Positions 1 through 61,000 of a stretch of DNA of 62,000 nucleotides are shown here, in pieces. The number at the start of each line of letters is the position of its first letter. The stretch's first letter is position 1. The translations under genes and the position numbers were made by a program. Origin of the DNA: Octopus vulgaris (taxonomy: Eukaryota); NCBI GenBank assembly GCA_951406725.2, contig OX597817.1:87936001-87998000 (forward strand), read 5' to 3'. The notes under the pieces were generated by a model. It worked only from the letters and a program-made list of their open reading frames with translations. It did no database searches and was not told where the DNA came from.

Positions 1-336
1 CACCTACACCCAGATATATCACTGCAAACAATAACTCTTTACTTGAATGGGTTATGGTACCCAAAAGATGACTGTAATATGAAACATCATTAAAATGTCT
101 TTTCTAGATGGTGCTATCAAGTTAGTCATAGCTTGAGCCAATTCTGGCCAAAACTTTTTTAAGTATCCAAGTACGTATATATATATACATAGGCACAGGA
201 GTGGCTTATAGGTGCAGGAGTGGTAAGTAGCTTGCTTACCAACCACATAGTTTTTGGGCAAGTGTCTTCTACTATAGCCTTGGGCTGACCAAAGCCTTGT
301 GAGTGGATTTGGTAGGTGGAAACTGAAAGAAGCCCG

Positions 337-338
<2 letters not shown>

Positions 339-385
<47 letters not shown>
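339..385. repeat. (TA)n microsatellite
   Basis: Direct read; similar tracts at 2610-2646, 12175-12250, 13372-13405 and 29820-29868. Confidence 0.95.
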
Positions 386-387
<2 letters not shown>

Positions 388-1299
388 AATAAATGAAAGA
401 ATGGAGTTGAACGATGAATTAACAAAATTCCTTTATTTTCGACATATGTTTCGAAGGCTGCATATTCCTAATTTTGAAGGAATAAGGGGTGCATTATGCC
501 GCCTTCTCATCAGGAAAAGCAAGGAACTTATGTCAGCATCAAGATGCACAAAAACTTTTAGATGACTGCCCACACAGAGCCCATAGCGATAATGAGTGTT
601 TCTTTAAAATATTCCGTTATAAGCAGTGACGTCAAAAATGGTTGAATGTAGAAGATTCTAGAAGGTTCAAGGTTGGAGGGGGTAGGCCTAAGAATAGGAA
701 GGTGATAGGGTGCAGGTCATATGAATGGTGATTTTGTTGTTTTCTTTTGTGAATGAATGCCTATGTTTGTGTATGTATATAACTGCATTAATGTCTGTGT
801 GTGTGTATGTGTGTGCGTGATTGTGTGTGTGGTTGGGTAGATGCCAAAAACAGACAGTGGTGAAGTGACAGGTTTGTGTCTGTATGTTTGATTGTGCTTA
901 CGATAAAGAGAGGGAAAGAGAGAGAGAGAGGAGGGGGAGGTAGAGAGACAAAGGTAAAACATACCTCAATGGATTGGGTAGTAGTCCTTTAAGAGTATAA
1001 AAATTGACTATGGGGGTGATATATAAATGGGATTATATTATTAAAATTCAAGGAGGTTATCTATATTAATCATTATTCATATGAGTGAAAGGTGTGTTTT
1101 TGCCAGTGCATGCACCTAAAGGTTTTCTCGACCATTGTATTTATTAAAGGAACTTTGGCGAACAATATATGGAAAAGTTCGGAATTACAGACGCCACAAA
1201 ATTTTCTGCCCTTATCAAATGGAAAGGATACCGACAATATGGACCATTCCAGCCTGAAAGTTGTATTGCTGTCCTTAAGACGCCAAACTAATTTACTTA
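383..1299 (-). mobile_element. Penelope-like retroelement 3' end (left arm), inverted copy
   Basis: Reverse complement of 1312-2229 with about a dozen substitutions and four small indels by eye; ORF 1073-1519(-) mirrors 1092-1538(+). Confidence 0.85.
428..526 (-). ncRNA. Type I hammerhead ribozyme (PLE-associated), mirror copy
   Basis: Minus strand reads TTCCTTGCTTTTC-CTGATGA-GAAGGC...GCCTTC-GAAAC-ATAT-GTC|GAAAATAAAGGAA; all core positions intact; predicted cut between plus-strand 441 and 440. Confidence 0.88.
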
Positions 1300-2376
1300 A
1301 CAGCACAGGACTAAGTAAATTAGTTTGGCGTCTTAAGGACAGCAATACAACTTTCAGGCTGGAATGGTCCATATTGTCGGTATCGTTTCCGTTTGATAAG
1401 GGCAGAAAATTTTGTGGCGTCTGTAATTCCGAACTTTTCCATATATTGTTCGCCAAAGTTCCTTTAATAAATACAATGGTCGAGAAATCCTTTAGGTGCA
1501 TGCACTGGCAAAAACACACCTTTCACTCATATGAATAATGATTAATATAGATAACCTCCTTGAATTTTAATAATATAATCCCATTTATATATCACCCCCA
1601 TAGTCAATTTTTATACTCTTAAAGGACTACTACCCAATCCATTGAGGTATGTTTTACCTCCCCCTCCTCTCTCTCTCTTTCCTTCTCTCTATCGTAAGCA
1701 CAATCAAACACACAGACACAAACCTGTCACTTCACCACTGTCTGTTTTTGGCATCTACCCAACCACACACACAATCACGCACACACATACACACACACAG
1801 ACATTAATGCAGTTATATACATACACACACATAGGCACTCATTCACAAAAGAAAACAACAAAATCACCATTCATATGACCTGCACCCTATCACTTTCCTA
1901 TTCTTAGGCCTACCTCCTCCAACCTTGTTTGAACCCTTGAACCTTCTAGAATCTTCTACATTCAACCATTTTTGACGTCACTGCTTATAACGGAATATTT
2001 TAAAGAAACACTCATTATCGCTATGGGCTCTGTGTGGGCAGTCATCTAAAAGTTTTTGTGCATCTTGATGCTGATATAAGTTCCTTGTTTTTCCTGATGA
2101 GAAGGCGGCATAATGCACCCCTTATTCCTTCGAAATTAGGAATATGCAGCCTTCGAAACATATGTCGAAAATAAAATAAAGGAATTTTGTTAATTCGTCG
2201 TTCAACTCCATTCTTTCATTTATTTGTATTTAAAAAAACACACAATTTTCCACACGAAAGCACGTGATCTCTGCCCTAGGCATGTAGCTTCAACCGTGTT
2301 TTTCTGACGTGAATTTGCTACCCAGGTATCGGTTAACCGAATTATCCATAATAAGATAATTCATTCAACTACTCTT
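1300..2376 (+). mobile_element. Penelope-like retroelement 3' end (right arm): GIY-YIG endonuclease C-terminus + pLTR with hammerhead ribozyme
   Basis: 1299-1538 reads NSTGLSKLVWRLKDSNTTFRLEWSIL...CGVCNSE...INTMVE...RCMHWQKH*, the typical tail of PLE GIY-YIG domains (T.LS..IW.LK...W.I...C..C..E...LN...E...C.H..K), followed by a UTR with a hammerhead at 2081-2184. Confidence 0.85.
2081..2184 (+). ncRNA. Type I hammerhead ribozyme (PLE-associated)
   Basis: TTTTC-CTGATGA(2094-2100)-GAAGGC...GCCTTC-GAAAC-ATAT-GTC(2164-2166)|GAAAA: complete catalytic core; stem I TTTTC/GAAAA, stem II GAAGGC/GCCTTC, minimal stem III with palindromic ACATATGT. Confidence 0.88.
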
Positions 2377-2994: not shown

Positions 2995-3355
2995 GGCATA
3001 GGAGTGGTGTGGTAGTAGCTTCCTTACCAACCTCATGGTTCCGGGTTCATTCCCACTGTGTGGCACCTTGGGCAAGTGTCTTCTACTATAGCCTCAGGCC
3101 GACCAAAGCCTTGAGTGGATTTCGTAGACGGAAACTGAAAGAAGCCCATCATATATATGTATATGTATGTGTGTGTGTATGTTTGTATATGGTGGTGTGT
3201 TTACATCCCCGTAACTTAGCTGTTCAGCAAAAGAGACAAATAGAATAAGTACTAGGCTTACAAAGAATAAGTCCTGAGGTCGATTTCTCGACTAAAGGTG
3301 GTGCTCCAGCATGGCCACAGTCAGATGACTGAAACAAGTAAAAGAGTAACGAGTA
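2995..3355 (+). mobile_element. SINE family A, full copy
   Basis: GGCATAGGAGTGG head with A/B-box-like motifs, internal TA/TG tract, AAAAGAGTAA tail; repeated throughout the window. Confidence 0.85.
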
Positions 3356-7970: not shown

Positions 7971-38836
<30,866 letters not shown>

Positions 38837-47600: not shown

Positions 47601-50600
47601 ATATTAGTTTTAAATTTTGGCACAAGGCCAGCAAGTTCAGGGGAGGGGTAAGTCAATTACAACGACCCCAGTGATCAACTGGTACTTACTTTATCGACTG
47701 CAAAAGGGTGAAAGGCAAAGTCGACCTCAGTGGAATTTGAACTCAGAATGTAAAGACAGACGAAATGCAGCTAAGCATTTTACTCAGCATGCTAATGATT
47801 CTGCTAGCTCACTGCCTTCCAATCAACCAAAATATTAGTATTTAGAACTTTTTATCAGATTGAAATAGACTCAAAAAAATGGAAGGCTTACCTAGATTTT
47901 CCTTTTGTACTCCATTCCAGCACTTTCCAAATGACAGCTTGTTCTTCACTACAGTCAGTTGCTGAGGAGAGCTGTTGTAGGAGGTAAGCATGGAGTGTCA
48001 GGAATGCACCTTGCTGTAGACATTCTTCAAGAAATTCAGCCAGGTTCAATTCAGGAATTTGAATATTTAACAAAATAATGTCCCAGTTACTCTTTTGGAA
48101 GCTTCCATCTGTTTGAGATTTAATAAAAGATGAATGCAGATTTAATCATATGAAGCTAGCAGTATGCAGTAAATTATACCTATACATGTATGCGTACATA
48201 TTTTGAACACATAAACACAAATACTCAAAGATAAATAGTTTGGTTCATTAACTATATCATATAACAATAGAACTTCAGTAAAAAAAAAGAACCTATAGCT
48301 TATAAACCAATGGAAGCAAGCTTTATCTGTTGCCTTCAGTAAGGCAGGAACATTCTTCTTTGTAAGAAAATGTAGAGAGTTTCATGTAGTGATACAAGAT
48401 ATTGTGATTACAGAAACAGTGCAAGAGGCATGTAGATAGATAATGTCTGTGTGGAGTGTAAAAGAAGGGTGAAGGCTGGTAGCGAGTGTTGTTACAAGTG
48501 ATAGTAAACAGATTATTAATCTACAGAAGAAAGAGTATAGGAGACTGAACCAAATCCTGACACAAACCAGAGTTAATATAATGGGGGTTGGGGAGAGAAC
48601 CATATTGATATATATATATATATATATATATACATTATGATGAAGCACTGAAGTGGAAAGAATCAAAGGAAGATAACTTTTTCACATCAAGCATAAGTAT
48701 GAAAATTCTGCTGACATCAAGATAAACAACATTACTTTTGCCAAATTGCTCAAATACAAAATACCCATGTCCAGAAAATTCACTGTAAACATTTTTGCAA
48801 TGGGAAATTTCACCATAAAGAAGGCACGTAAGCAGACTGTAAACTAGATAACTCATTTTAAAGAAATTATCTTTTGCTAATTGGTAGGTTAGTTGATGAA
48901 GCAGCCATTTTTAAAAAACAGCTATTTTTTTTTTTTTTTTTCAATTTACTTTTTACTTTTTTTCCAACATATTTTCCTGCAGTTAAAATGTTTATGATGA
49001 ACTTTCCTATAACCCAAAATACCTGCCAGTCTGTTATGCAAAAGGAAGTCTTCAGTATTACCCTTAATACCCACAAAATACAATTTATCATGAGACTCAA
49101 CACCTCATTGGCAGATTTACTGATTTAGCATCATATTTAGATTTATAAATGTTAAGAAGATAATTTTTTGTATTAACTAACCTGAAGTGAAATAAACATC
49201 AACACATTTCTCTAAAATTTGTACAACATTTGTAAGACTAGCCAAAGAACGACAAGCAGCAGCAATGGCTGGCATTAATAGTATGCTGTGGATGGAGGAC
49301 TCTAACCAGCTGTAAATGGTACTGGTAATTAGTTCACTGATTGTTCCTTCTGGATTACAATTATTCAAAAGACTATACACAGTTTTCATCATCTCCACGG
49401 ATTCCTCATTTTGCACATATCGATCAGCAACTGGAAATATATTAGTAGAATAATTAGAGTTTAACAATAAAACATTACAGTAGAACAATATGTAGTAACA
49501 GTTATAGTACATCAATGCTAAGAGATAACCACTTAATTGTAAACAAGCACCCGGGTGCACTACGACTCAGCAGCAAAGATTAAAAGAGGAGACAGCAGCC
49601 ATTTGTCAAGTAAAGACAACAATGAAAGCTAAACGTGCATGCAAACTAGCCAGAATAAAACATAAACAGATACTAAAAGAGCCATAAAGAGGAAAGATTA
49701 CATAAGACTTAAGATTTCACCAATTTGGTGATGCAGCTTGTGAGACTGATTGGACAGTGGTAGACAGGGATGGTGTAGTTGCTTTTTTTCAAACAGGGGA
49801 ATAACTCTTGCAATTTTCCATACATCTCTCCACAAGTAAACAGAATTGCAGAATAGTTTGACAATAAAGCATTATAGAAGAACAGTATGTAGTACCAAAA
49901 TAGTACATCAGTACTGTCAAATAATCACCCAATTCTTATACATCTCTCTACAAGAAGTAAAATTTCAATATCTAGACAATCAATTTAATTTATATGAAAT
50001 CATTACTTAGCAGCAACCTGACACAAACATTAACCAAATTTAATTAAACATAATGTTTTATTTTGTTTTGAATCTTTATTTAAGCAAGTTATATAGAGAC
50101 TTTAGGATTAAATGCTGAGATTAAATAGAAAATTAAAGAGAATTTAAGTGCCATATATTTCTGAAATGAGTTTCTCACTGAAATAAAGCTGAAATGAGTT
50201 TCTCACTTAAATGATTTATATATGAAAAAGAAAACTTCCGGTCTTATTTAATAAATAATAATAATAATAATTGTGTACAGTGCTCAGGTGCACTACAACT
50301 CATCTAAAGTGTATATATAATCAGGTGTAGTTTCGGCGGATTTCGGAAAGCATGAGGGCCTTAAAAGATGCAGTGTCATGGCAGTCAACAACTGACGCAG
50401 GCAGTTTATTCCATGCTTCAGCAATTCTGAGCGTGAAAAAATGTTTCCGAAAGTCATGGGAGCTGTATTGTTTTCTGACTTTGTAGGCATGTCCACGTGT
50501 GTTAGACACATCTCCATATTGTCACTATTTCATAAACTATTAAATGTGACTCAGATAGATAGGTTGTTTATTAATAGAAGAATCATTAATGCTGTGAATA

Positions 50601-55045: not shown

Positions 55046-58000
55046 ATTTCTGCTGTAGGCACAAGGCCTGAAATTTTGGGGGGAGAGGGCTAGTCGATTA
55101 TATCAACTCCAGTCCTCAACTGATACATATTTTGAAGACCACAAAAGAATGAAAGGTAAATACAAATAAATGACCTAATGTAATACCAGACTCTCCTGGT
55201 AATATGTACATGTTTTGTCTTGGTGTAAAAGATGGGCTATCGCAAATATTCAGCTCAATATCACAGATTTGCTTGTCAGTTACTTGACCATAACAAGTTG
55301 AGCGTATCCTTTAGTGGCGGACGATATGTGCATCTTTGATCATGAGCAGGAGTATCATAGCTATGAGCTGAGAGTGATTCTTTGGGGTTTGAATAATTCA
55401 CCCCTGGAAACATGGGTGTTTCATTCCTTAAACAAACTTATTCAGAGACCTTTTAAGAGGGATGGGCTACTCAACCTGAAGAAAATTCTAACAGGGCTCT
55501 CATCTGCAAGGTCATGTGCTGTTTATTTTGATATGAAGTCACCATGTCATGCGCATATGGTTGTGATGCATGTACTCTTATCAGACGGGTAATCATGATG
55601 GGTATATTGGGCTTTATATATTTGGCACTTTGATGGTATGTGCTGTCCTTTCACTCAATAATAATGGTTTCGAATTTTGGCACAAAGCCAGCAATTTTGG
55701 TGGAAAGTGTAAGTCAATTGCATCAAACAGTGTTCACCTGGTATTTATTTTATAAACCCCAAAAGGACAAAATTCAAGTCGACCTCAGCAGAATTTGAAC
55801 TCAGAACATCAAGAAGGACAAAATGCTGCTAAGTAATTTGACTGGCATGCTAGCAATTCTACAAGCTTGCCACCTTAATAATAATAATGACAATTTTGAT
55901 CTGTAAATAATATATTTGATAATAATTTAACTATTTTTCATTTCTTTGTTTTAATATAAATGTCTCTCTTTATCAACAATTACTTTATTGTTTGTAAAAA
56001 AAGATAGAATAATAGTGTATAGCCAATACAACCTGGTATATAACTGGTATACATTTATGCACCCTAAATGATATGAAGAGACATAAGAAATTGAGCTCAA
56101 TATTATCAAGATTTTCATATATCACCAGATATGTATACATGGAAAATACTTACAAATGATAAAAAACTTTCTTTATCATCTCCAGCAAGTTGCAAGAATA
56201 AATGGAAAAGATGTGCAGCAAACTTGGATACAATATTTACAGGGTAATTGCTGATGAAATCCTGCATTGCATTTGCCCAGTTGACATGAGGGGCAATTAC
56301 TTTCACAAGCTGGAAGCTTTCTATGTTACCATTATCACGAATCTGTCAGATGGACACAAATACATAAGATAATTAAAAATAATAATGGCAATAATCATGA
56401 GTATTACTGCCATTATGAAATATATATAAAGCCATTCTTAGAAAACAATCAATAAATTGTTAATATTTTAAAGCATTATTGGATGATTTTAAATCACTGT
56501 AATCAAATGTACTTTTGTGAGGTTTTTATCAAATAAAAAACATATTACAATCACAAAATACTCAATCAGAAAATAAATTTTAAACCTAAAATCTTCAATT
56601 ACAAATTTTATAAACTTTATACTCTAATCAAATATTACCAACAAATTAACTTCTATATGTCGTAAATTGTTGACAATGTTACTTTTATAGATGGTCACCA
56701 CTTTTTATAGCCACGTTTTGTTACCATTTGTGTAACACTACTTTTATATCATCATCATCAACAACAATTAACATCTGTGTTCCAAGCTAGCATGGTTTGT
56801 TCAAGGCTTGCACTGAGCTCCAAAGTCTGCTTTGGCATGGTTTTTACAGCTGGATGCTCTTCCTAATACCAGCCACTTTACAGCATGGACTGGGTGCTTT
56901 TTTTGTGCTACCTGCACTACTGAGATTGTCATGTAGCTCTCAGGACTACAAACCTTAGTAGTGGTGGGGTGTCAGCTTCATGCTAGGGGATGAGGAGATT
57001 TCTATGAGCAGAGAGGGGCTACTACCAAAAATATGTTAATAATAATTTGTGATATTTTCTCAATATATTTATCATGGAAGTGAACATATCCAGATAAAAA
57101 CTGCAGTTGACTAGTCTGCCAACACAAGGTTGTTCTAAATAGTTATGCAACTTGCATGCAGGAAACACTGTTCTTTTAGACTTTATACAAACAAACTCCT
57201 TGCAGTAGAATTAGAGAATGCATGAGACAAATTCCTTTAACATTTCTGTTATTCCTCTCTAGCTCTATAAAGCTAATTAGCATCAAATAGTTATTCCTAT
57301 TCTATATGATTAATTTTATCATTAAAATGAAAATAGTAAAACAAGAGATATTTATAGTTAGAGTAAATGTAGCAAAAACCAAAGTAATAGTAAGCAGCAA
57401 GGCATACTCAGCACACACCCCCTCGGGTAGGTGGTCCTGCTCAATCTGTAGGAAAGGTACAGGTAGAAACTCCATAAGATGCACCCAATGTAAGCTATGG
57501 ACGCATAAGAGGTGCAGCAACATTAAAGGGAAATTAACAGATAAGATAGCTTTCATGTGCGGCAGATGCACAGGGGCAATAGACACAACAGACACTCAGA
57601 AAACAGATTCCATCACACTCCAGGGAGAGAAACTAGAAGTAGTTGATAGTTTCCGCTACCTGGGTGACCAAGTTAGTAGCGGAGGTGGATGCACAGAGAG
57701 TATCACCACTAGAATACGAATAGCCTGGGCAAAGTTCAGAAAGCTCCTACCCCTACTGGCGGCAAAGGGTCTCTCCGTCAGACCGAAAGGTAGATTGTAT
57801 GATGCATGTGTGCGAACTGCCATGCTTCACGGTAATGAAACATGGGCTGTGACTGCAGAGGACATGCGTAGACTTGAAAGAAATGAAGCTAGCATGATCC
57901 GCTGGATGTGTAGTGTCAGTGTGCACGCACGAGAGAGTGTAAGCATCCTGAGAGAAATGCTGGATATAAGAAGCATCAGATGTGGTGTGCAAGAGCGACG

Positions 58001-61000
58001 CTTGCGATGGTATGGTCATGTGCTGCGGATGGATGAAGAGAGATGTGTGAAGAAGTGCCACTCCCAAACAGTTGAAGGTATCAGGGGGAGAGGTAGACCC
58101 AGGAAGACATGGGATGAGGTAGTCAAGCATGACCTCAGAGCATTGGGCCTCACTGAGGCAATGGCGAAGGACCGAGATCTCTGGAGATATGCTGTGACTG
58201 CAAAGACCCGGGCTGCTTCCTGCATCAGTTCCACATAGCCCCTGCCCATTCAAAGTACCCCGGATCCCAGATAGTCCTGCTGTGCCTGAGGAGATCTGTT
58301 GAGTCAAGTACATGAACATGAACGTCGAAATAAATATCAATGGAAATAGGAGTTATGATGCCTGTGCCGGTGGCACATAAAAAGTACTATCCGAACGTGG
58401 CCGATGCCAGCGCTGCCCCGACTGGCCTCTGTGCCGGTAAGACCATCTGAATGTTGCCAGCGCCGCCCTGGCTGGCTCCCGTGCCGCTGGCACGTTAAAA
58501 GCTCGAACCGATCGTGACCAATGCTGGACCCCCCGGCCCCTGTGCAGGTGGCACGTAAAAAGCACCCACTCCACTCGCGGAGTGGTTGGCGTTAGGAAGG
58601 GCATCCAGCCGTAAAAACTCTGCCAGATCAGACTGGAGCCTGGAGCGGCCCCTGGCTTCCCAGACCCCGGTCGAACCGTCCAACCCGTGCTAGCGCGGAA
58701 AACGGACGTTAAACGATGATGATGATGATGATGATACATGCTAAGATTTAAATTAAAACTCTGTTTCTAAACAATAAATCAGATTCTTAAACAAGGGTTT
58801 TACTTACAGTTGACATTGTTTCTGCAACCTGCAAATCAATTGTAAGTTGATCCCATGGCAACAAGGCCAATTCAACATTCAGTAACGTAACACAATAAAC
58901 TGGTATCTTTCTCGATGCTAATATAGAGGTATAGAAGATCCACAGCCGTCCAAGTATGTCTTGGGTTTGTGAGTAAGCTACAGGTGATAATAAAGCTGTA
59001 AAGAAAGAAAACACAACAGTAATTAAGAGTCTTTTAGTGAAGCATTCAAAAGTAAATCAAGTGTAAAGGTACCCTGGCAGGAAGGTTTCTGATAAATGAA
59101 ATACAACCAAAAGATGTTTCATAGTATTCTGAATTAACTGGAAACCTAACGTGACAACAACAGACACCTTCTTCATAAAGAACTCAAAATGCAACTGAAG
59201 ACCTCTCCTAATCATTCTGGTTCTGATACAATACAAGTCAATAAAGCAATCCAAATATTAAAAAAAAATCTTACAAACAACCATTCAGAAGCCACATGAA
59301 AGTATTTGAAGGCAGTATTATATGTAATAAGGAGAAATTTCAAACTATAATTCCACTACCAAAGAAGGGTAAACCTCAGCACAGTCACATCCATTGATGC
59401 ATCGAGACAACATTAATCACTGATATTATATCATCATCATCATCTTTCATATCATTTAATGTCCATGTTCCATATTGGCATTAAAAGATCCACAGATATT
59501 TCAGAAAAGCCTGTCTCTACAGTAAAAAAATCTTCATTGAAAATTAAAGTTCAAGCCTATTAGTCATCATGGTAATAGTCTAGATTTTAAAAACCTGTGA
59601 GACTGACAGAATCAAAAGAAAAGTAAGTTTGTCAATGTTAGAACTTACATTTTTTTGATAATGTTTTAATCATCCATTCCTATATAGGAGCAGTTGGATG
59701 ATTTTAAATCATTGTAATCAAACGTAGAGAACATTCTAGATATAACAAAATCATAAACTTTGAGATTATTGTAAACAAAAACCAAAACAAAAAAAAAGCA
59801 GAATATCATTTTTTAATTACGATTTAATTTAAATATGTCTAATTACAAAAGTTAATTTGTGGCACAAAACAATGCTAAAAATCATAGCTAGGTAAATCAA
59901 TTACTTTACTTTCCATTCTAAATCAAATACAACAAAAACTTACATTTATAAAATGTGTGGATATATCGGATTGCATCACAGAAGTTTTGAACCATTATGG
60001 TAGCAGCCTCATGGTCACCAGCTGTCCAAGGGATCAGTAATTGAGTCTGCGCTGGTCCTTTCAATGGCCTCACCCAAGGACTGAACACATTTACTATCAT
60101 ATTCCATAAATAATCAATCACTAAAAAAAAATATAATATATAAATTATGAACACAAAAGAAAATCAATACAACATCAATACAAATCAATACATAAAACGA
60201 TAAAGTAAAGTTCCCAGCAAGAATGTGAAACAGTTTCAATTCCTAGTAATAGCCTATTCAATTTGACTATGACACTAATGAGTTTAAGTTAATCTCATTT
60301 CCTATGTTATTTACATTGGAACTAAGAGATCAATATTTTAAATGTGTTTTGTTTTGCTTTTTAACCCTTTAGAATTCAAACCAGCCATATCTGGCCCAAT
60401 TATTCTACCTGTTTTATGTTCAAACCAGCCAGATCCAGCCTCTCACACCTACCCTACAATGTCATTCTAAAGTAGACAATCACATCATTGAAACCTCAAC
60501 GCCATAAGATAATGCATGATTAATTGAAAACAATGTGAATAAATAAGCAATACATTTGATCGAGCAATCTGAATACTAAATAGAATATTTTTTGGTAAAA
60601 ATTATGATATAGTTAACTAATTTTTAGTGATATCTATTTTAACAACCTTATGAAAATGATAAAAAATAGGTAGGGAATCAGATCTGACATATACCTTAGT
60701 CAGCTTGCTTCCTGGTTTCTAAATCTGCTTGACACCTAAATTTACAAAATTAATTAAATCTTTGTTTTAGATTGCTCACTAAAAATATAGTTTTGTTATC
60801 ATCATTTGAACTGGTTTGGTATATTGCGGTTCCTGAACTGAACTGGTTTGGCATACTGTAGTCTGCCATCTTATCTATTATGCCAAACATCTCCAGATCT
60901 CATCACACCAATTCTACCCCCATCTCTTCCTTGGTCTTACCCCAACCACTGCCAGTATACAGCACATTTTTACACTGTAAATTTTATTAAGAGTTTACCA

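What the first reader, a model, noticed from the sequence alone, without database searches (positions are those of the whole stretch)
428..2184. Twin intact hammerhead ribozymes, one per strand, pointing outward from a fold-back retroelement
Seen: 2081-2184(+) and 428-526(-) both carry the full core CUGAUGA-stem II-GAAA-stem III-GUC. Stem III is 2 bp with a self-complementary ACAUAUGU. Stem II is unusually long and branched (GAAGGC/GCCUUC, GCAU/AUGC, AUUCCU/AGGAAU). In the left copy stem I extends to 5 bp + 2x2 loop + 6 bp; the right copy has an extra AAAUA bulge. AAUAAA overlaps the 3' strand of stem I. Known: Penelope-like elements carry type I hammerheads in their pLTRs, and minimal palindromic-stem-III forms cleave as dimers. 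Inference: any one transcript holds only one sense ribozyme together with its near-perfect antisense 1.6 kb away. Cleavage of the host pre-mRNA would then compete with hairpin formation, a kinetic self-cleave versus fold-back switch inside what is probably a TBC1D32 intron.
Basis: partly seen in the sequence, partly recalled or inferred. Interest (0 to 1): 0.9.

Follow-up and report, generated by a model that had tools for sequence, protein, structure and literature searches.

The report
Head-to-head Penelope retroelement stubs with hammerheads
Two broken copies of a Penelope-like jumping gene sit head to head, most likely inside an intron of the TBC1D32 gene; each carries the hammerhead ribozyme motif normal for that family, which is a known by-product of how these elements insert and not a new RNA switch.

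Summary
Window 380-1299 and 1312-2232 form a ~920-bp inverted repeat with a 12-nt spacer. Each arm carries a complete type I hammerhead near its outer end: + strand 2081-2184, cut after C2166; - strand 526-428, cut after C441. The motif is not chance (0 of 200 simulated windows). Rfam Hammerhead_1 scores it below threshold (23.5 and 25.5 bits, gathering 34).

Each arm begins with the last 74 codons of a GIY-YIG endonuclease ORF, followed by a ~690-nt 3' UTR holding the ribozyme. That ORF tail matches 257 protein clusters that carry the marks of the 'Hydra' clade of Penelope-like elements.

A model built from relatives finds a hammerhead downstream of the endonuclease in 43 of 59 usable loci, with strong covariation. 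The closest relatives share GAAACAUAUGUC and the long helix II. Outward-facing twin hammerheads recur in other loci.

The locus is therefore two 5'-truncated copies of a Hydra-clade element, joined head to head, abutting a (TA)n tract. This architecture is published. TBC1D32 exons are confirmed on the + strand downstream.

The proposed cleave-versus-fold-back switch is not supported. The sense ribozyme always lies in the 3' arm, and its duplex with the antisense copy is about -175 kcal/mol against -21 to -24 for the ribozyme fold.

The parts
150..337 (.). SINE copy whose (TA)n tail is the left flank of the insertion
   Evidence: Segment 150-340 matches at least 10 other places in the window at 73-94% identity.
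338..386 (.). (TA)n microsatellite abutting the left end of the element; presumed insertion target
   Evidence: Sequence. (TA)n is the reported preferred target of Hydra-clade PLEs (PMC8557442 section 11).
380..1299 (-). Left arm: a 5'-truncated PLE copy in inverted orientation (sense on the - strand)
   Evidence: Inverted-repeat arms; arm alignment.
428..526 (-). Left type I hammerhead motif. CUGAUGA 513-507, helix II 506-453, GAAA 452-449, ACAUAUGU 449-442, C17 = 441, predicted cut between 441 and 440.
   Evidence: Descriptor; Rfam Hammerhead_1 25.5 bits, E 1.4e-4 on a 121-nt slice; fold.
1073..1297 (-). Left-arm copy of the last 74 codons of the GIY-YIG endonuclease ORF plus its stop codon
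   Evidence: Mirror of 1314-1538. The 148-aa palindrome-spanning ORFs are listed.
1300..1311 (.). 12-nt spacer (ACAGCACAGGAC) at the centre of the palindrome
1312..2232 (+). Right arm: a 5'-truncated PLE copy, sense on the + strand (the same strand as the host gene)
1314..1538 (+). Last 74 codons plus stop of a Hydra-clade PLE endonuclease ORF. It contains CxxC, the conserved E and N, and CxH.
   Evidence: Translation. phmmer against 1.84 billion representatives: 257 hits at E<=1e-3, always matching the C-terminal end of the hit. Alignment.
1539..2080 (+). 3' UTR of the element, including CT- and CA-rich low-complexity tracts
   Evidence: Sequence. A similar layout is seen in L001.
2081..2184 (+). 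Right type I hammerhead motif. CUGAUGA 2094-2100, helix II 2101-2154, GAAA 2155-2158, ACAUAUGU 2158-2165, C17 = 2166. A 5-nt AAAAU insertion at 2168-2172 lies in the 3' strand of helix I.
   Evidence: Rfam Hammerhead_1 23.5 bits, E 6e-4 on a 126-nt slice.
2170..2180 (+). Two overlapping AAUAAA hexamers just 3' of the predicted cleavage site
   Evidence: Sequence.
2185..2232 (+). Terminal segment of the element; the 3' end lies 66 nt after the cut site
   Evidence: The inverted repeat ends at 2232 and 380. In relative L090 the element ends ~67 nt after its cut site, next to a (TATC)n tract.

Best explanation
[quoted passage not shown] It consists of two 5'-truncated copies joined head to head.

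Each copy keeps only the last 74 codons of the endonuclease ORF and a ~690-nt 3' UTR. The family's type I hammerhead lies 66 nt from the element's 3' end. That layout is why one ribozyme sits at each outer end, one per strand.

The left end of the insertion abuts the (TA)n tail of a SINE, and the whole thing most likely lies in an intron of TBC1D32 (+ strand).

The hammerhead is a lineage feature of the element, not of the host gene. In the element's own life cycle it is proposed to process pLTR or tandem transcripts, but that role is itself unproven in the literature.

At this locus it most likely does nothing. In a read-through transcript the sense ribozyme is paired into a ~920-bp hairpin with its antisense copy.

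Shown here: the anatomy, the homology, the conservation of the hammerhead in the clade, the recurrence of the architecture, and the host gene.

Inferred:
- How the palindrome formed. The same truncation point in both arms and the 12-nt loop suggest snap-back copying of the nascent cDNA, or priming on both strands.
- The lack of function at this locus.
For: 1. Arms and divergence.

2. The ORF tail at 1314-1538 is homologous to the C-terminus of 257 protein clusters. These include P0150, with an RT YRDDG motif, a Cys-rich CNC...C linker that does not fit the CxCX5C spacing, and VVY...YIG...R...E...N. P0078 and P0120 do carry a CxCX5C linker.

3. In L005 the ORF upstream of the endonuclease has RWR, SDKTGNLY and YRDDG. 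[quoted passage not shown]

4. An AlphaFold2 model of the relatives' endonuclease (pLDDT 78) has the I-TevI GIY-YIG catalytic domain as its top PDB match: probability 0.97, TM 0.57 on the target. T4 EndoII is at rank 5.

5. A covariance model built from 14 relatives, with no window sequence, finds 61 hammerheads in 90 loci. Of these, 52 lie downstream of the endonuclease on the same strand, at a median of 193 nt. 43 of the 59 loci with >=350 nt of downstream sequence have one.

6. Covariation: 86% of cells paired against 60% in shuffles; 220 cells with changes on both sides against 65.

7. The closest relatives (L090-L092, L002, L088) carry a homologous hammerhead with the same GAAACAUAUGUC. 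Their helix II is 50-59 nt with a different helix sequence. Core plus helix III is 18/19 identical in L090, against 45% in the other ribozyme columns.

8. Outward-facing twin hammerheads within inverted repeats also occur in L004 (144-nt arms) and L042 (94-nt arms, 2-nt spacer).

9. Literature: PLE insertions often carry an inverted 5'-truncated copy next to them (PMC8557442). Paired hammerheads on opposite strands 100-700 bp apart were seen in Schistosoma (PMC4209133). A purified PLE protein cleaves and extends both DNA strands (PMC11167929).

10. Energetics.
Against: - No RT, linker or 5' part of the element is present in the window, so clade assignment rests on 74 residues plus relatives at 30-52% identity.
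- Pfam and PDB sequence searches do not recognise the relatives' RT or endonuclease. The fold match to I-TevI has a weak E-value (0.05).
- Rfam scores are below the gathering threshold.
- My clade model does not align the window copies correctly because of the 54-nt helix II: 11.6 bits, using an alternative CGAAA inside loop 2.
- The right flank is not (TA)n, and no target-site duplication was identified.
- The equal truncation point of the two arms is not explained by any paper I read. Snap-back is my inference.
- No other copy of this element is in the window, and the source genome could not be searched.
- Monomeric cleavage of the isolated motif cannot be excluded. Invertebrate type I hammerheads with a helix III of 2 bp plus tetraloop can cleave at 0.1-0.8 per min.
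Confidence: 0.85

Rival explanations
1. The intronic ribozyme and its antisense copy form a kinetic switch: the TBC1D32 pre-mRNA is either self-cleaved after C2166 or protected by fold-back pairing, and this tunes host gene output.
For: - The motif has a complete core.
- The host gene is TBC1D32 on the + strand, so the right copy is sense in the pre-mRNA.
- Related invertebrate type I hammerheads can cleave as monomers.
- Conserved intronic hammerheads are cited for amniotes (reference list of PMC7229834).
Against: - The sense ribozyme is always transcribed after its complement.
- The duplex is -174.8 kcal/mol against -20.8 for the competent fold of the right copy. That fold is already 2.8 kcal/mol above the copy's own MFE.
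- The right copy has a 5-nt insertion in helix I.
- There is no second sense copy for the dimer that the palindromic helix III favours.
- The two copies are young duplicates, so nothing shows selection at this locus.
- For a vertebrate PLE, core mutants did not affect insertion and no RNA-seq ends were found at the cut site.
- A 2026 preprint reports hammerhead-bearing retrozymes depleted from introns.
Confidence: 0.04
2. The relevant product is the ~920-bp perfect RNA hairpin in the pre-mRNA, not the ribozyme. It would be a substrate for A-to-I editing or for small-RNA production, and the hammerheads are passengers.
For: - Near-perfect arms with a 12-nt loop.
- Very large predicted duplex stability.
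- The location is very likely inside a transcribed gene.
- Established knowledge, not tested here: long intronic inverted repeats are classical ADAR and Dicer substrates.
Against: - No expression, editing or small-RNA data could be examined.
- It would be a side effect of any inverted duplication, with no evidence of selection.
- It is compatible with the best explanation rather than an alternative origin.
Confidence: 0.25
3. The palindrome is an assembly or sequencing artefact (for example a fold-back chimeric long read). The genome really holds a single truncated copy with one hammerhead.
For: PLE tandem and inverted structures are reported to cause problems in whole-genome assemblies (PMC8557442).
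Against: - The arms differ by 15 substitutions and 4 indels, including a 14-nt and a 12-nt one. That is not expected for two strands of one molecule after polishing.
- The two outer flanks are different sequences: a SINE plus (TA)n on the left and unique sequence on the right.
- The same architecture occurs in independent assemblies.
Confidence: 0.04
4. The hammerhead-like motifs are chance matches in AT-rich repeat DNA.
For: - There is no Rfam hit at gathering score.
- The slice E-values would scale to about 0.07-0.3 over the whole window (my arithmetic).
Against: - 0 of 200 simulated windows give a motif of this quality.
- A homologous motif with a conserved core is found in relatives.
- Its position downstream of the endonuclease is conserved across the clade.
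Confidence: 0.01

Closest known systems
Hydra clade of Penelope-like elements (Craig, Yushenova, Rodriguez and Arkhipova 2021, PMC8557442)
   Same: [quoted passage not shown]
- Relatives carry DKT, RW[K/R] and a CxCX5C linker.
- A canonical-type hammerhead lies near the 3' end.
- The insertion sits next to (TA)n.
- Copies are 5'-truncated, with an adjacent inverted copy.
- The clade is reported from molluscs.
   Different: - Only the last ~920 nt of the element is present.
- There is no direct pseudo-LTR.
- The 3' UTR is longer: the hammerhead starts ~555 nt after the stop codon, against a median of ~190 nt after the end of the endonuclease match in relatives.
- Helix II is 54 nt, against 10-15 nt in most relatives.
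PLE hammerheads (Cervera and de la Pena 2014, PMC4209133)
   Same: - A type I motif in the terminal repeat region of a PLE.
- A small palindromic helix III that favours dimers.
- A G10.1-C11.1 pair and a larger than usual helix II.
- Single truncated copies are scattered in genomes, and pairs on opposite strands 100-700 bp apart were noted in Schistosoma.
   Different: - There is no unpaired nucleotide between A9 and G10.1.
- Helix III is present (2 bp plus AUAU loop) rather than absent.
- Helix II is far longer: 6 bp, then 4 bp, then 6 bp, with a 12-nt internal loop.
- The two copies are 1.6 kb apart.
Metazoan non-LTR retrozymes (Cervera and de la Pena 2020, PMC7229834; Li, Clavereau and Pollet 2026 preprint)
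   Same: A type I hammerhead with a helix III of 2 bp plus tetraloop. These are non-coding, PLE-related sequences.
   Different: Retrozymes are direct tandem repeats of ~170-400 bp that yield circular RNAs. Here there is no tandem repeat, only one sense ribozyme per strand, and a coding remnant of the endonuclease.
Conserved intronic hammerheads of amniotes (Rfam HH9 and HH10)
   Same: A hammerhead motif inside an intron of a protein-coding gene.
   Different: There is no Rfam match to those families. Those are single, deeply conserved motifs with stable helices. This one is a recent transposon remnant paired with its own antisense.

Membership tests
Hammerhead ribozyme, type I (Rfam RF00163) | Conserved core C3 U4 G5 A6 N7 G8 A9 ... 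G12 A13 A14 ... A15.1-U16.1 H17 | tested here: met
   Both copies read CUGAUGA ... GAAA ... U C. No core difference between the copies.
Hammerhead ribozyme, type I (Rfam RF00163) | Three helices around the core, with helix I open and a G10.1-C11.1 pair | tested here: met
   Helix I is 5 bp plus a distal extension, helix II 6 bp plus an extension, helix III 2 bp plus a tetraloop. The competent fold is within 2.2-2.8 kcal/mol of the MFE.
Hammerhead ribozyme, type I (Rfam RF00163) | Score at or above the curated gathering threshold (34 bits) | tested here: not met
   23.5 and 25.5 bits on short slices; nothing on the whole window. A relative with a short helix II scores 19.5 bits, so the one clade relative tested also falls below it.
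Hammerhead ribozyme, type I (Rfam RF00163) | Helices supported by covariation among relatives | tested here: met
   Across the clade: 12 of 14 pairs show changes on both sides, and 86% of cells are paired against 60% in shuffles. The alignment is fitted to the model and the seeds were chosen by a pairing descriptor. In the close subfamily, the proximal part of helix II is kept with a different sequence in L090 and L002, but that rests on only three lineages.
Hammerhead ribozyme, type I (Rfam RF00163) | Mg2+-dependent self-cleavage 3' of H17 | not testable with these tools
   Needs in vitro transcription assays.
Penelope-like element, Hydra clade | C-terminal GIY-YIG endonuclease with CxxC and CxH flanking the conserved E and N, and no CCHH motif | tested here: met
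   The window tail contains CGVC ... E ... N ... CMH and is homologous to 257 clusters. The relatives' domain folds like I-TevI: probability 0.97, E 0.05. Pfam and PDB sequence searches give nothing. Absence of the CCHH motif was not examined.
Penelope-like element, Hydra clade | RT with DKT (instead of DKG), an RWK motif, and a CxCX5C linker | tested here: inconclusive
   Absent from the window because both copies are 5'-truncated. Present in relatives: P0150 ADKT and YRDDG; L005 RWR, SDKT and YRDDG; CNCRxKxxC in the consensus.
Penelope-like element, Hydra clade | Hammerhead near the 3' end or in the pseudo-LTR | tested here: met
   In the window it lies 66 nt from the element's end. In relatives, 43 of 59 loci have one downstream of the endonuclease on the same strand. 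Upstream direct copies are seen in L012, L022, L023, L043 and L060.
Penelope-like element, Hydra clade | Insertion into (TA)n or another microsatellite | tested here: inconclusive
   The left end abuts (TA)n at 338-386. The right end abuts unique sequence. Relative L090 ends at a (TATC)n tract.
Penelope-like element, Hydra clade | 5' truncation with an adjacent inverted truncated copy | tested here: met
   The same is seen in L004 and L042. Described in PMC8557442.
Penelope-like element, Hydra clade | Pseudo-LTR (partial direct tandem) | tested here: not met
   No direct repeat of the arm anywhere in the window.
Metazoan non-LTR retrozyme | Direct tandem repeats of ~170-400 bp, each with a type I hammerhead | tested here: not met
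   There are only two copies, in inverted orientation and 1.6 kb apart.
Amniote intronic hammerheads HH9/HH10 (RF02275, RF02277) | Match to those covariance models | tested here: not met
   Only Hammerhead_1 is reported. Overlapping lower-scoring matches from the same clan are suppressed by the tool.

The most novel reading that the evidence does not exclude
Cephalopod-type Hydra-clade PLEs may carry a distinct hammerhead variant. Its helix II is extended to 50-59 nt, and this is kept in at least three diverged lineages (the window, L090, L002) alongside an invariant GAAACAUAUGUC. The extension could be a functional module, for example a protein or RT recognition arm, or a substitute for the usual loop-loop tertiary contact. 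Separately, the intronic 920-bp hairpin could feed RNA editing or small-RNA pathways acting on TBC1D32 transcripts.
Probability: 0.25. Interest if true: 0.35.

Novelty: new member of a known kind. Interest (0 to 1): 0.2.

Why it matters
This mainly matters for annotation. The locus is a clean example of a Penelope-like element insertion architecture (head-to-head truncated copies, microsatellite target, terminal hammerhead) in what looks like a cephalopod genome.

It also shows two practical points:
- Rfam's Hammerhead_1 threshold misses both window copies and the one Hydra-clade relative I tested (19.5-25.5 bits against 34), so genome scans relying on that threshold may under-report them.
- The endonuclease tail plus a clade-specific covariance model recovers them efficiently: 61 hits in 90 loci.

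The long helix II variant is a small addition to the known diversity of PLE hammerheads.

No evidence supports a regulatory role in TBC1D32. If one existed it would be of moderate interest, because transposon-borne intronic ribozymes with a host function are rare.

Tried and rejected
- Rfam on the whole window and on 350-2300 at E<=10 gave no hammerhead. The only matches were microRNA and snoRNA models fitting the palindrome centre or TA repeats, which are artefacts of any long hairpin.
- My clade model R1 did not find the window copies with default filters. With filters off it gave 11.6 bits by misusing a CGAAA inside loop 2 of the right copy. The model cannot absorb a 54-nt helix II, so this is uninformative, not negative.
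- The word-based protein search with the 74-residue tail found nothing. The exhaustive phmmer search was needed.
- Pfam found nothing on the arm ORFs or on the relatives. PDB sequence searches were also empty.
- The search for related loci with a too-diverse alignment failed. A closer alignment worked.
- An exact-sequence look-up of the palindrome-spanning 148-aa ORF found nothing, so the source assembly and organism stay unidentified. A literature search for the SRR accessions of the closest relatives also found nothing.
- I first guessed the host gene was on the - strand, from an exon-like ORF at 49180-49566. Ten - strand ORFs gave no Pfam hit. The BROMI_C exons are on the + strand.
- I considered whether the antisense copy's own ACAUAUGU could supply a helix III partner for the sense ribozyme. 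I rejected this by inspection: the bases after it in the antisense copy cannot pair with the 5' strand of helix I.
- No supplementary sequences of the Hydra-clade paper are held, so no direct comparison with curated Hydra consensus proteins was possible.
Full report
OBSERVATION

The window holds a near-perfect palindrome. The arms are 380-1299 and 1312-2232, separated by the 12-nt spacer ACAGCACAGGAC. A global alignment of the arms gives 15 substitutions and four indels of 14, 2, 12 and 5 nt, about 1.7% divergence.

Near each outer end lies a complete type I hammerhead.
- + strand: CUGAUGA 2094-2100, a 54-nt helix II at 2101-2154, GAAA 2155-2158, CAUAUG, U2165, C2166.
- - strand: the same motif from 513 down to C441.

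- ACAUAUGU is a perfect palindrome. It gives 2 bp plus an AUAU loop in a monomer and 8 bp in a dimer.
- Helix II contains GAAGGC/GCCUUC, GCAU/AUGC and AUUCCU/AGGAAU.
- Left helix I is 5 bp, a 2x2 loop, then 5-6 bp.
- The right copy has an extra AAAAU at 2168-2172.
- Two AAUAAA hexamers follow the cut site.

One correction: helix II is a single interrupted hairpin with a 12-nt one-sided loop, not a branched structure.

IS IT MORE THAN CHANCE?

A descriptor of the observed quality found nothing in 200 simulated 62-kb sequences. A looser one found 0.04 per window.

Rfam gives a mixed answer.
- It reports nothing at gathering score on the window and nothing at E<=10 on 350-2300.
- On ~125-nt slices, Hammerhead_1 matches full length at 23.5 bits (E 6e-4) and 25.5 bits (E 1.4e-4). 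The model places a 50-nt insertion in helix II. The curated threshold is 34 bits.
- A relative with a short helix II scores only 19.5 bits. Rfam also reported none of the hammerheads in L003, L004 and L007 at E<=1.

The threshold therefore misses the window copies and the relatives I looked at, and the shortfall says little about this motif.

The two copies are not independent. They differ only at 2088, at 2132 and by the 5-nt indel. About 0.2 core changes would be expected at this divergence, so 'both intact' carries no information about selection.

WHAT THE ARMS ARE

On its sense strand, each arm starts with an open frame of 74 codons (1314-1535, stop 1536-1538):
SKLVWRLKDSNTTFRLEWSILSVSFPFDKGRKFCGVCNSELFHILFAKVPLINTMVEKSFRCMHWQKHTFHSYE.

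Pfam and a word-based search found nothing. An exhaustive phmmer search of 1.84 billion cluster representatives found 257 proteins at E<=1e-3, and the match almost always lay at their C-terminus.

The longer hits show what the protein is.
- P0150 has an RT-like YRDDG, a Cys-rich linker, then VVY...YIG...R...H...E...N. That is a GIY-YIG pattern. The protein begins ...ADKT....
- P0078 and P0120 have a CxCX5C linker.
- In L005 the ORF upstream of the endonuclease carries RWR, SDKTGNLY and YRDDG.

[quoted passage not shown] The clade's elements are under 3 kb, carry canonical hammerheads, insert into (TA)n, and occur in Cnidaria, Mollusca, Echinodermata and Arthropoda (PMC8557442 section 11). The window tail keeps CGVC, the E and N, and CMH.

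Sequence profiles do not recognise the domain. So I modelled the relatives' endonuclease from a 52-sequence alignment (pLDDT 78). The best PDB fold match is the catalytic domain of the GIY-YIG homing endonuclease I-TevI: probability 0.97, E 0.05, TM 0.57 on the target. T4 EndoII is at rank 5. This is modest support, and it agrees with the literature.

IS THE HAMMERHEAD A FEATURE OF THAT ELEMENT FAMILY?

I fetched 97 loci encoding relatives of the endonuclease.

A simple descriptor found type I hammerheads 75-250 nt downstream of the endonuclease, on the same strand, in 14 of them. I built a covariance model from those 14, with no window sequence. It then found 61 matches in 90 loci.
- 52 lie downstream of the endonuclease on the same strand, a median of 193 nt after the end of the endonuclease match.
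- 43 of the 59 loci with at least 350 nt of downstream sequence have one.
- Six more lie upstream on the same strand, as expected for pseudo-LTRs.

Covariation is strong in all three helices: 86% of cells paired against 60% in shuffles, and 220 cells with changes on both sides against 65 (seeds). Two caveats apply. The seeds were chosen by a pairing descriptor, and the alignment is fitted to the model.

The closest relatives are 41-52% identical in the tail and come from Logan assemblies of runs SRR118693xx. They carry a hammerhead that aligns with the window's over its whole length.
- L090-L092 read CUGACGA, a 50-nt helix II, then GAAACAUAUGUC.
- L002 has the same layout with an A14G change.
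- L088 is decayed.
- Core plus helix III is 18/19 identical between the window and L090; the one difference is at the free position N7. The rest of the ribozyme is 45% identical.
- The proximal helix II is kept with a different sequence: GAAGGC/GCCUUC, GAUUGAUACA/UGUAUCCAUU, GAUGAAUGCA/UGUUUUCGUU.

So the long helix II is a subfamily trait, not a local accident.

In L090 the element ends ~67 nt after the cut site, next to (TATC)n. In the window it ends 66 nt after the cut site; on the left that end abuts (TA)n.

WHY TWO, POINTING OUTWARD?

Both arms are 5'-truncated at the same point inside the endonuclease domain and are joined head to head. The 3'-terminal ribozymes therefore end up at the two outer ends, one per strand. 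This architecture is known.
- Paired hammerheads on opposite strands 100-700 bp apart were noted in Schistosoma (PMC4209133).
- A purified PLE protein cleaves and extends both DNA strands (PMC11167929).

I found it again in the fetched loci. L004 has 144-nt inverted arms, each with a hammerhead, 1642 nt apart. L042 has 94-nt arms with a 2-nt spacer. L041 has an inverted copy upstream of its endonuclease.

The identical truncation point and the 12-nt loop suggest snap-back copying of the nascent cDNA. That is my inference; nothing I read shows it.

The left flank (150-340) is a SINE present at least ten times in the window, and its tail is the (TA)n tract. The right flank is unique sequence. 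No other copy of the element is in the window.

HOST GENE

I scanned the 150 longest stop-to-stop ORFs of the window, piece by piece, against Pfam. BROMI_C (the Broad-minded/TBC1D32 Rab-TBC domain) matched four of them, best E 1.7e-29. Three were located, all on the + strand:
- 16918-17238, profile positions 61-106
- 32367-32603, profile positions 238-292
- 34368-34742, profile positions 296-358

This is a C-terminal domain (as its Pfam name indicates) and its first located exon is 15 kb downstream, so the insertion very probably lies in an intron. No upstream exon can be seen inside the window, so intron status remains an inference.

In the pre-mRNA the sense ribozyme is the right copy, the one with the 5-nt insertion in helix I.

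HOW IT MOST LIKELY BEHAVES

The ribozyme-competent secondary structure is accessible in isolation: -23.9 kcal/mol (left) and -20.8 (right), against MFEs of -26.1 and -23.6. A homodimer with an 8-bp helix III gains 7-8 kcal/mol over two monomers.

Published data on related motifs are mixed.
- Metazoan PLE hammerheads cleave poorly in vitro, even as dimers.
- Invertebrate type I motifs with a helix III of 2 bp plus tetraloop can reach 0.1-0.8 per min as monomers.

So cleavage by the isolated motif cannot be excluded.

At this locus the geometry is the least favourable possible. In a read-through transcript of either strand, the sense ribozyme is in the 3' arm. Its perfect complement has therefore already been made and is brought alongside by the zipping hairpin. 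The 100-nt sense:antisense duplex alone is -174.8 kcal/mol. Cleavage takes minutes. Helix zippering is generally taken to be sub-second; that figure is my own knowledge, not checked here.

No second sense copy is available for a dimer. Only a transcript starting inside the palindrome would free the ribozyme, and truncated copies lack the element's 5' promoter region. That last point is an inference.

For a vertebrate PLE, core mutants did not affect insertion in vitro, and no RNA-seq ends mapped to the cut site. The 'kinetic switch' is therefore unsupported.

A more plausible by-product is a long intronic dsRNA hairpin. I could not test that.

VERDICT

The thing is ordinary for its kind: a dead, head-to-head pair of 5'-truncated Hydra-clade Penelope-like element copies carrying the family's hammerhead, next to a (TA)n tract in a probable TBC1D32 intron.

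Two small additions come out of the work. One is a long-helix-II hammerhead variant shared by the closest relatives. The other is the finding that Rfam's threshold misses the window copies and the clade relatives I tested.

Noticed in passing
window 16918-17238, 32367-32603, 34368-34742 (+ strand): Exon-bearing ORFs match Pfam BROMI_C (the Broad-minded/TBC1D32 Rab-TBC domain) at profile positions 61-106, 238-292 and 296-358. A fourth ORF, the best match at E 1.7e-29, was not located.
   Followed up: partly
window 150-340, with copies near 3068, 5700, 22034, 29198, 30675, 31128, 35603, 45640 and 46133: An abundant SINE-like repeat ending in a (TA)n or TA/CA microsatellite, with at least 10 copies in 62 kb. 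From memory it resembles cephalopod SINEs, but the source organism was not verified.
   Followed up: partly
window 24504-26631 (+) and 57291-58235 (+): Other retroelement remnants. ORFs at 25077-25550 match RVT_1, and another ORF (not located) matches zf-RVT. A 315-aa ORF at 57.3-58.2 kb has a PHD finger.
   Followed up: no
window 2086-2146 (+): The right copy's loop 2 reads UCGAAAUU, where the left copy has UCAAAAUU (G/A at 2132). This creates a second CGAAA box, which my clade model preferred and used to give a spurious shorter 'hammerhead' at 11.6 bits.
   Followed up: yes
window 1249-1362: Rfam mir-581, mir-5583 and mir-87 matches (E down to 1.4e-6, all far below gathering score) sit on the palindrome centre. 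They reflect the hairpin shape only.
   Followed up: yes
window 37828-37862 (-): An isolated weak hammerhead-like descriptor hit (CUGAAGA, 4-bp helices) with no repeat context. At that stringency it is about what chance gives.
   Followed up: no
L049 1120-1168 (+) and 1306-1354 (-); L023 33-83 and 2430-2480 (both +): Other arrangements of paired hammerheads in relatives: an inward-facing pair in L049, and a direct pair 2.4 kb apart in L023 that looks like a full element with pseudo-LTRs.
   Followed up: no
L042 6049-6238: A perfect 94-nt inverted repeat with a 2-nt spacer holds two identical hammerheads of a different type (an unpaired base after A9, CAUG helix III). It lies 2.6 kb downstream of a Hydra-type element on the same contig.
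   Followed up: partly
window 49180-49566 (-): An exon-like ORF of 129 residues on the strand opposite TBC1D32, with no Pfam or PDB match. Its nature is unknown.
   Followed up: partly
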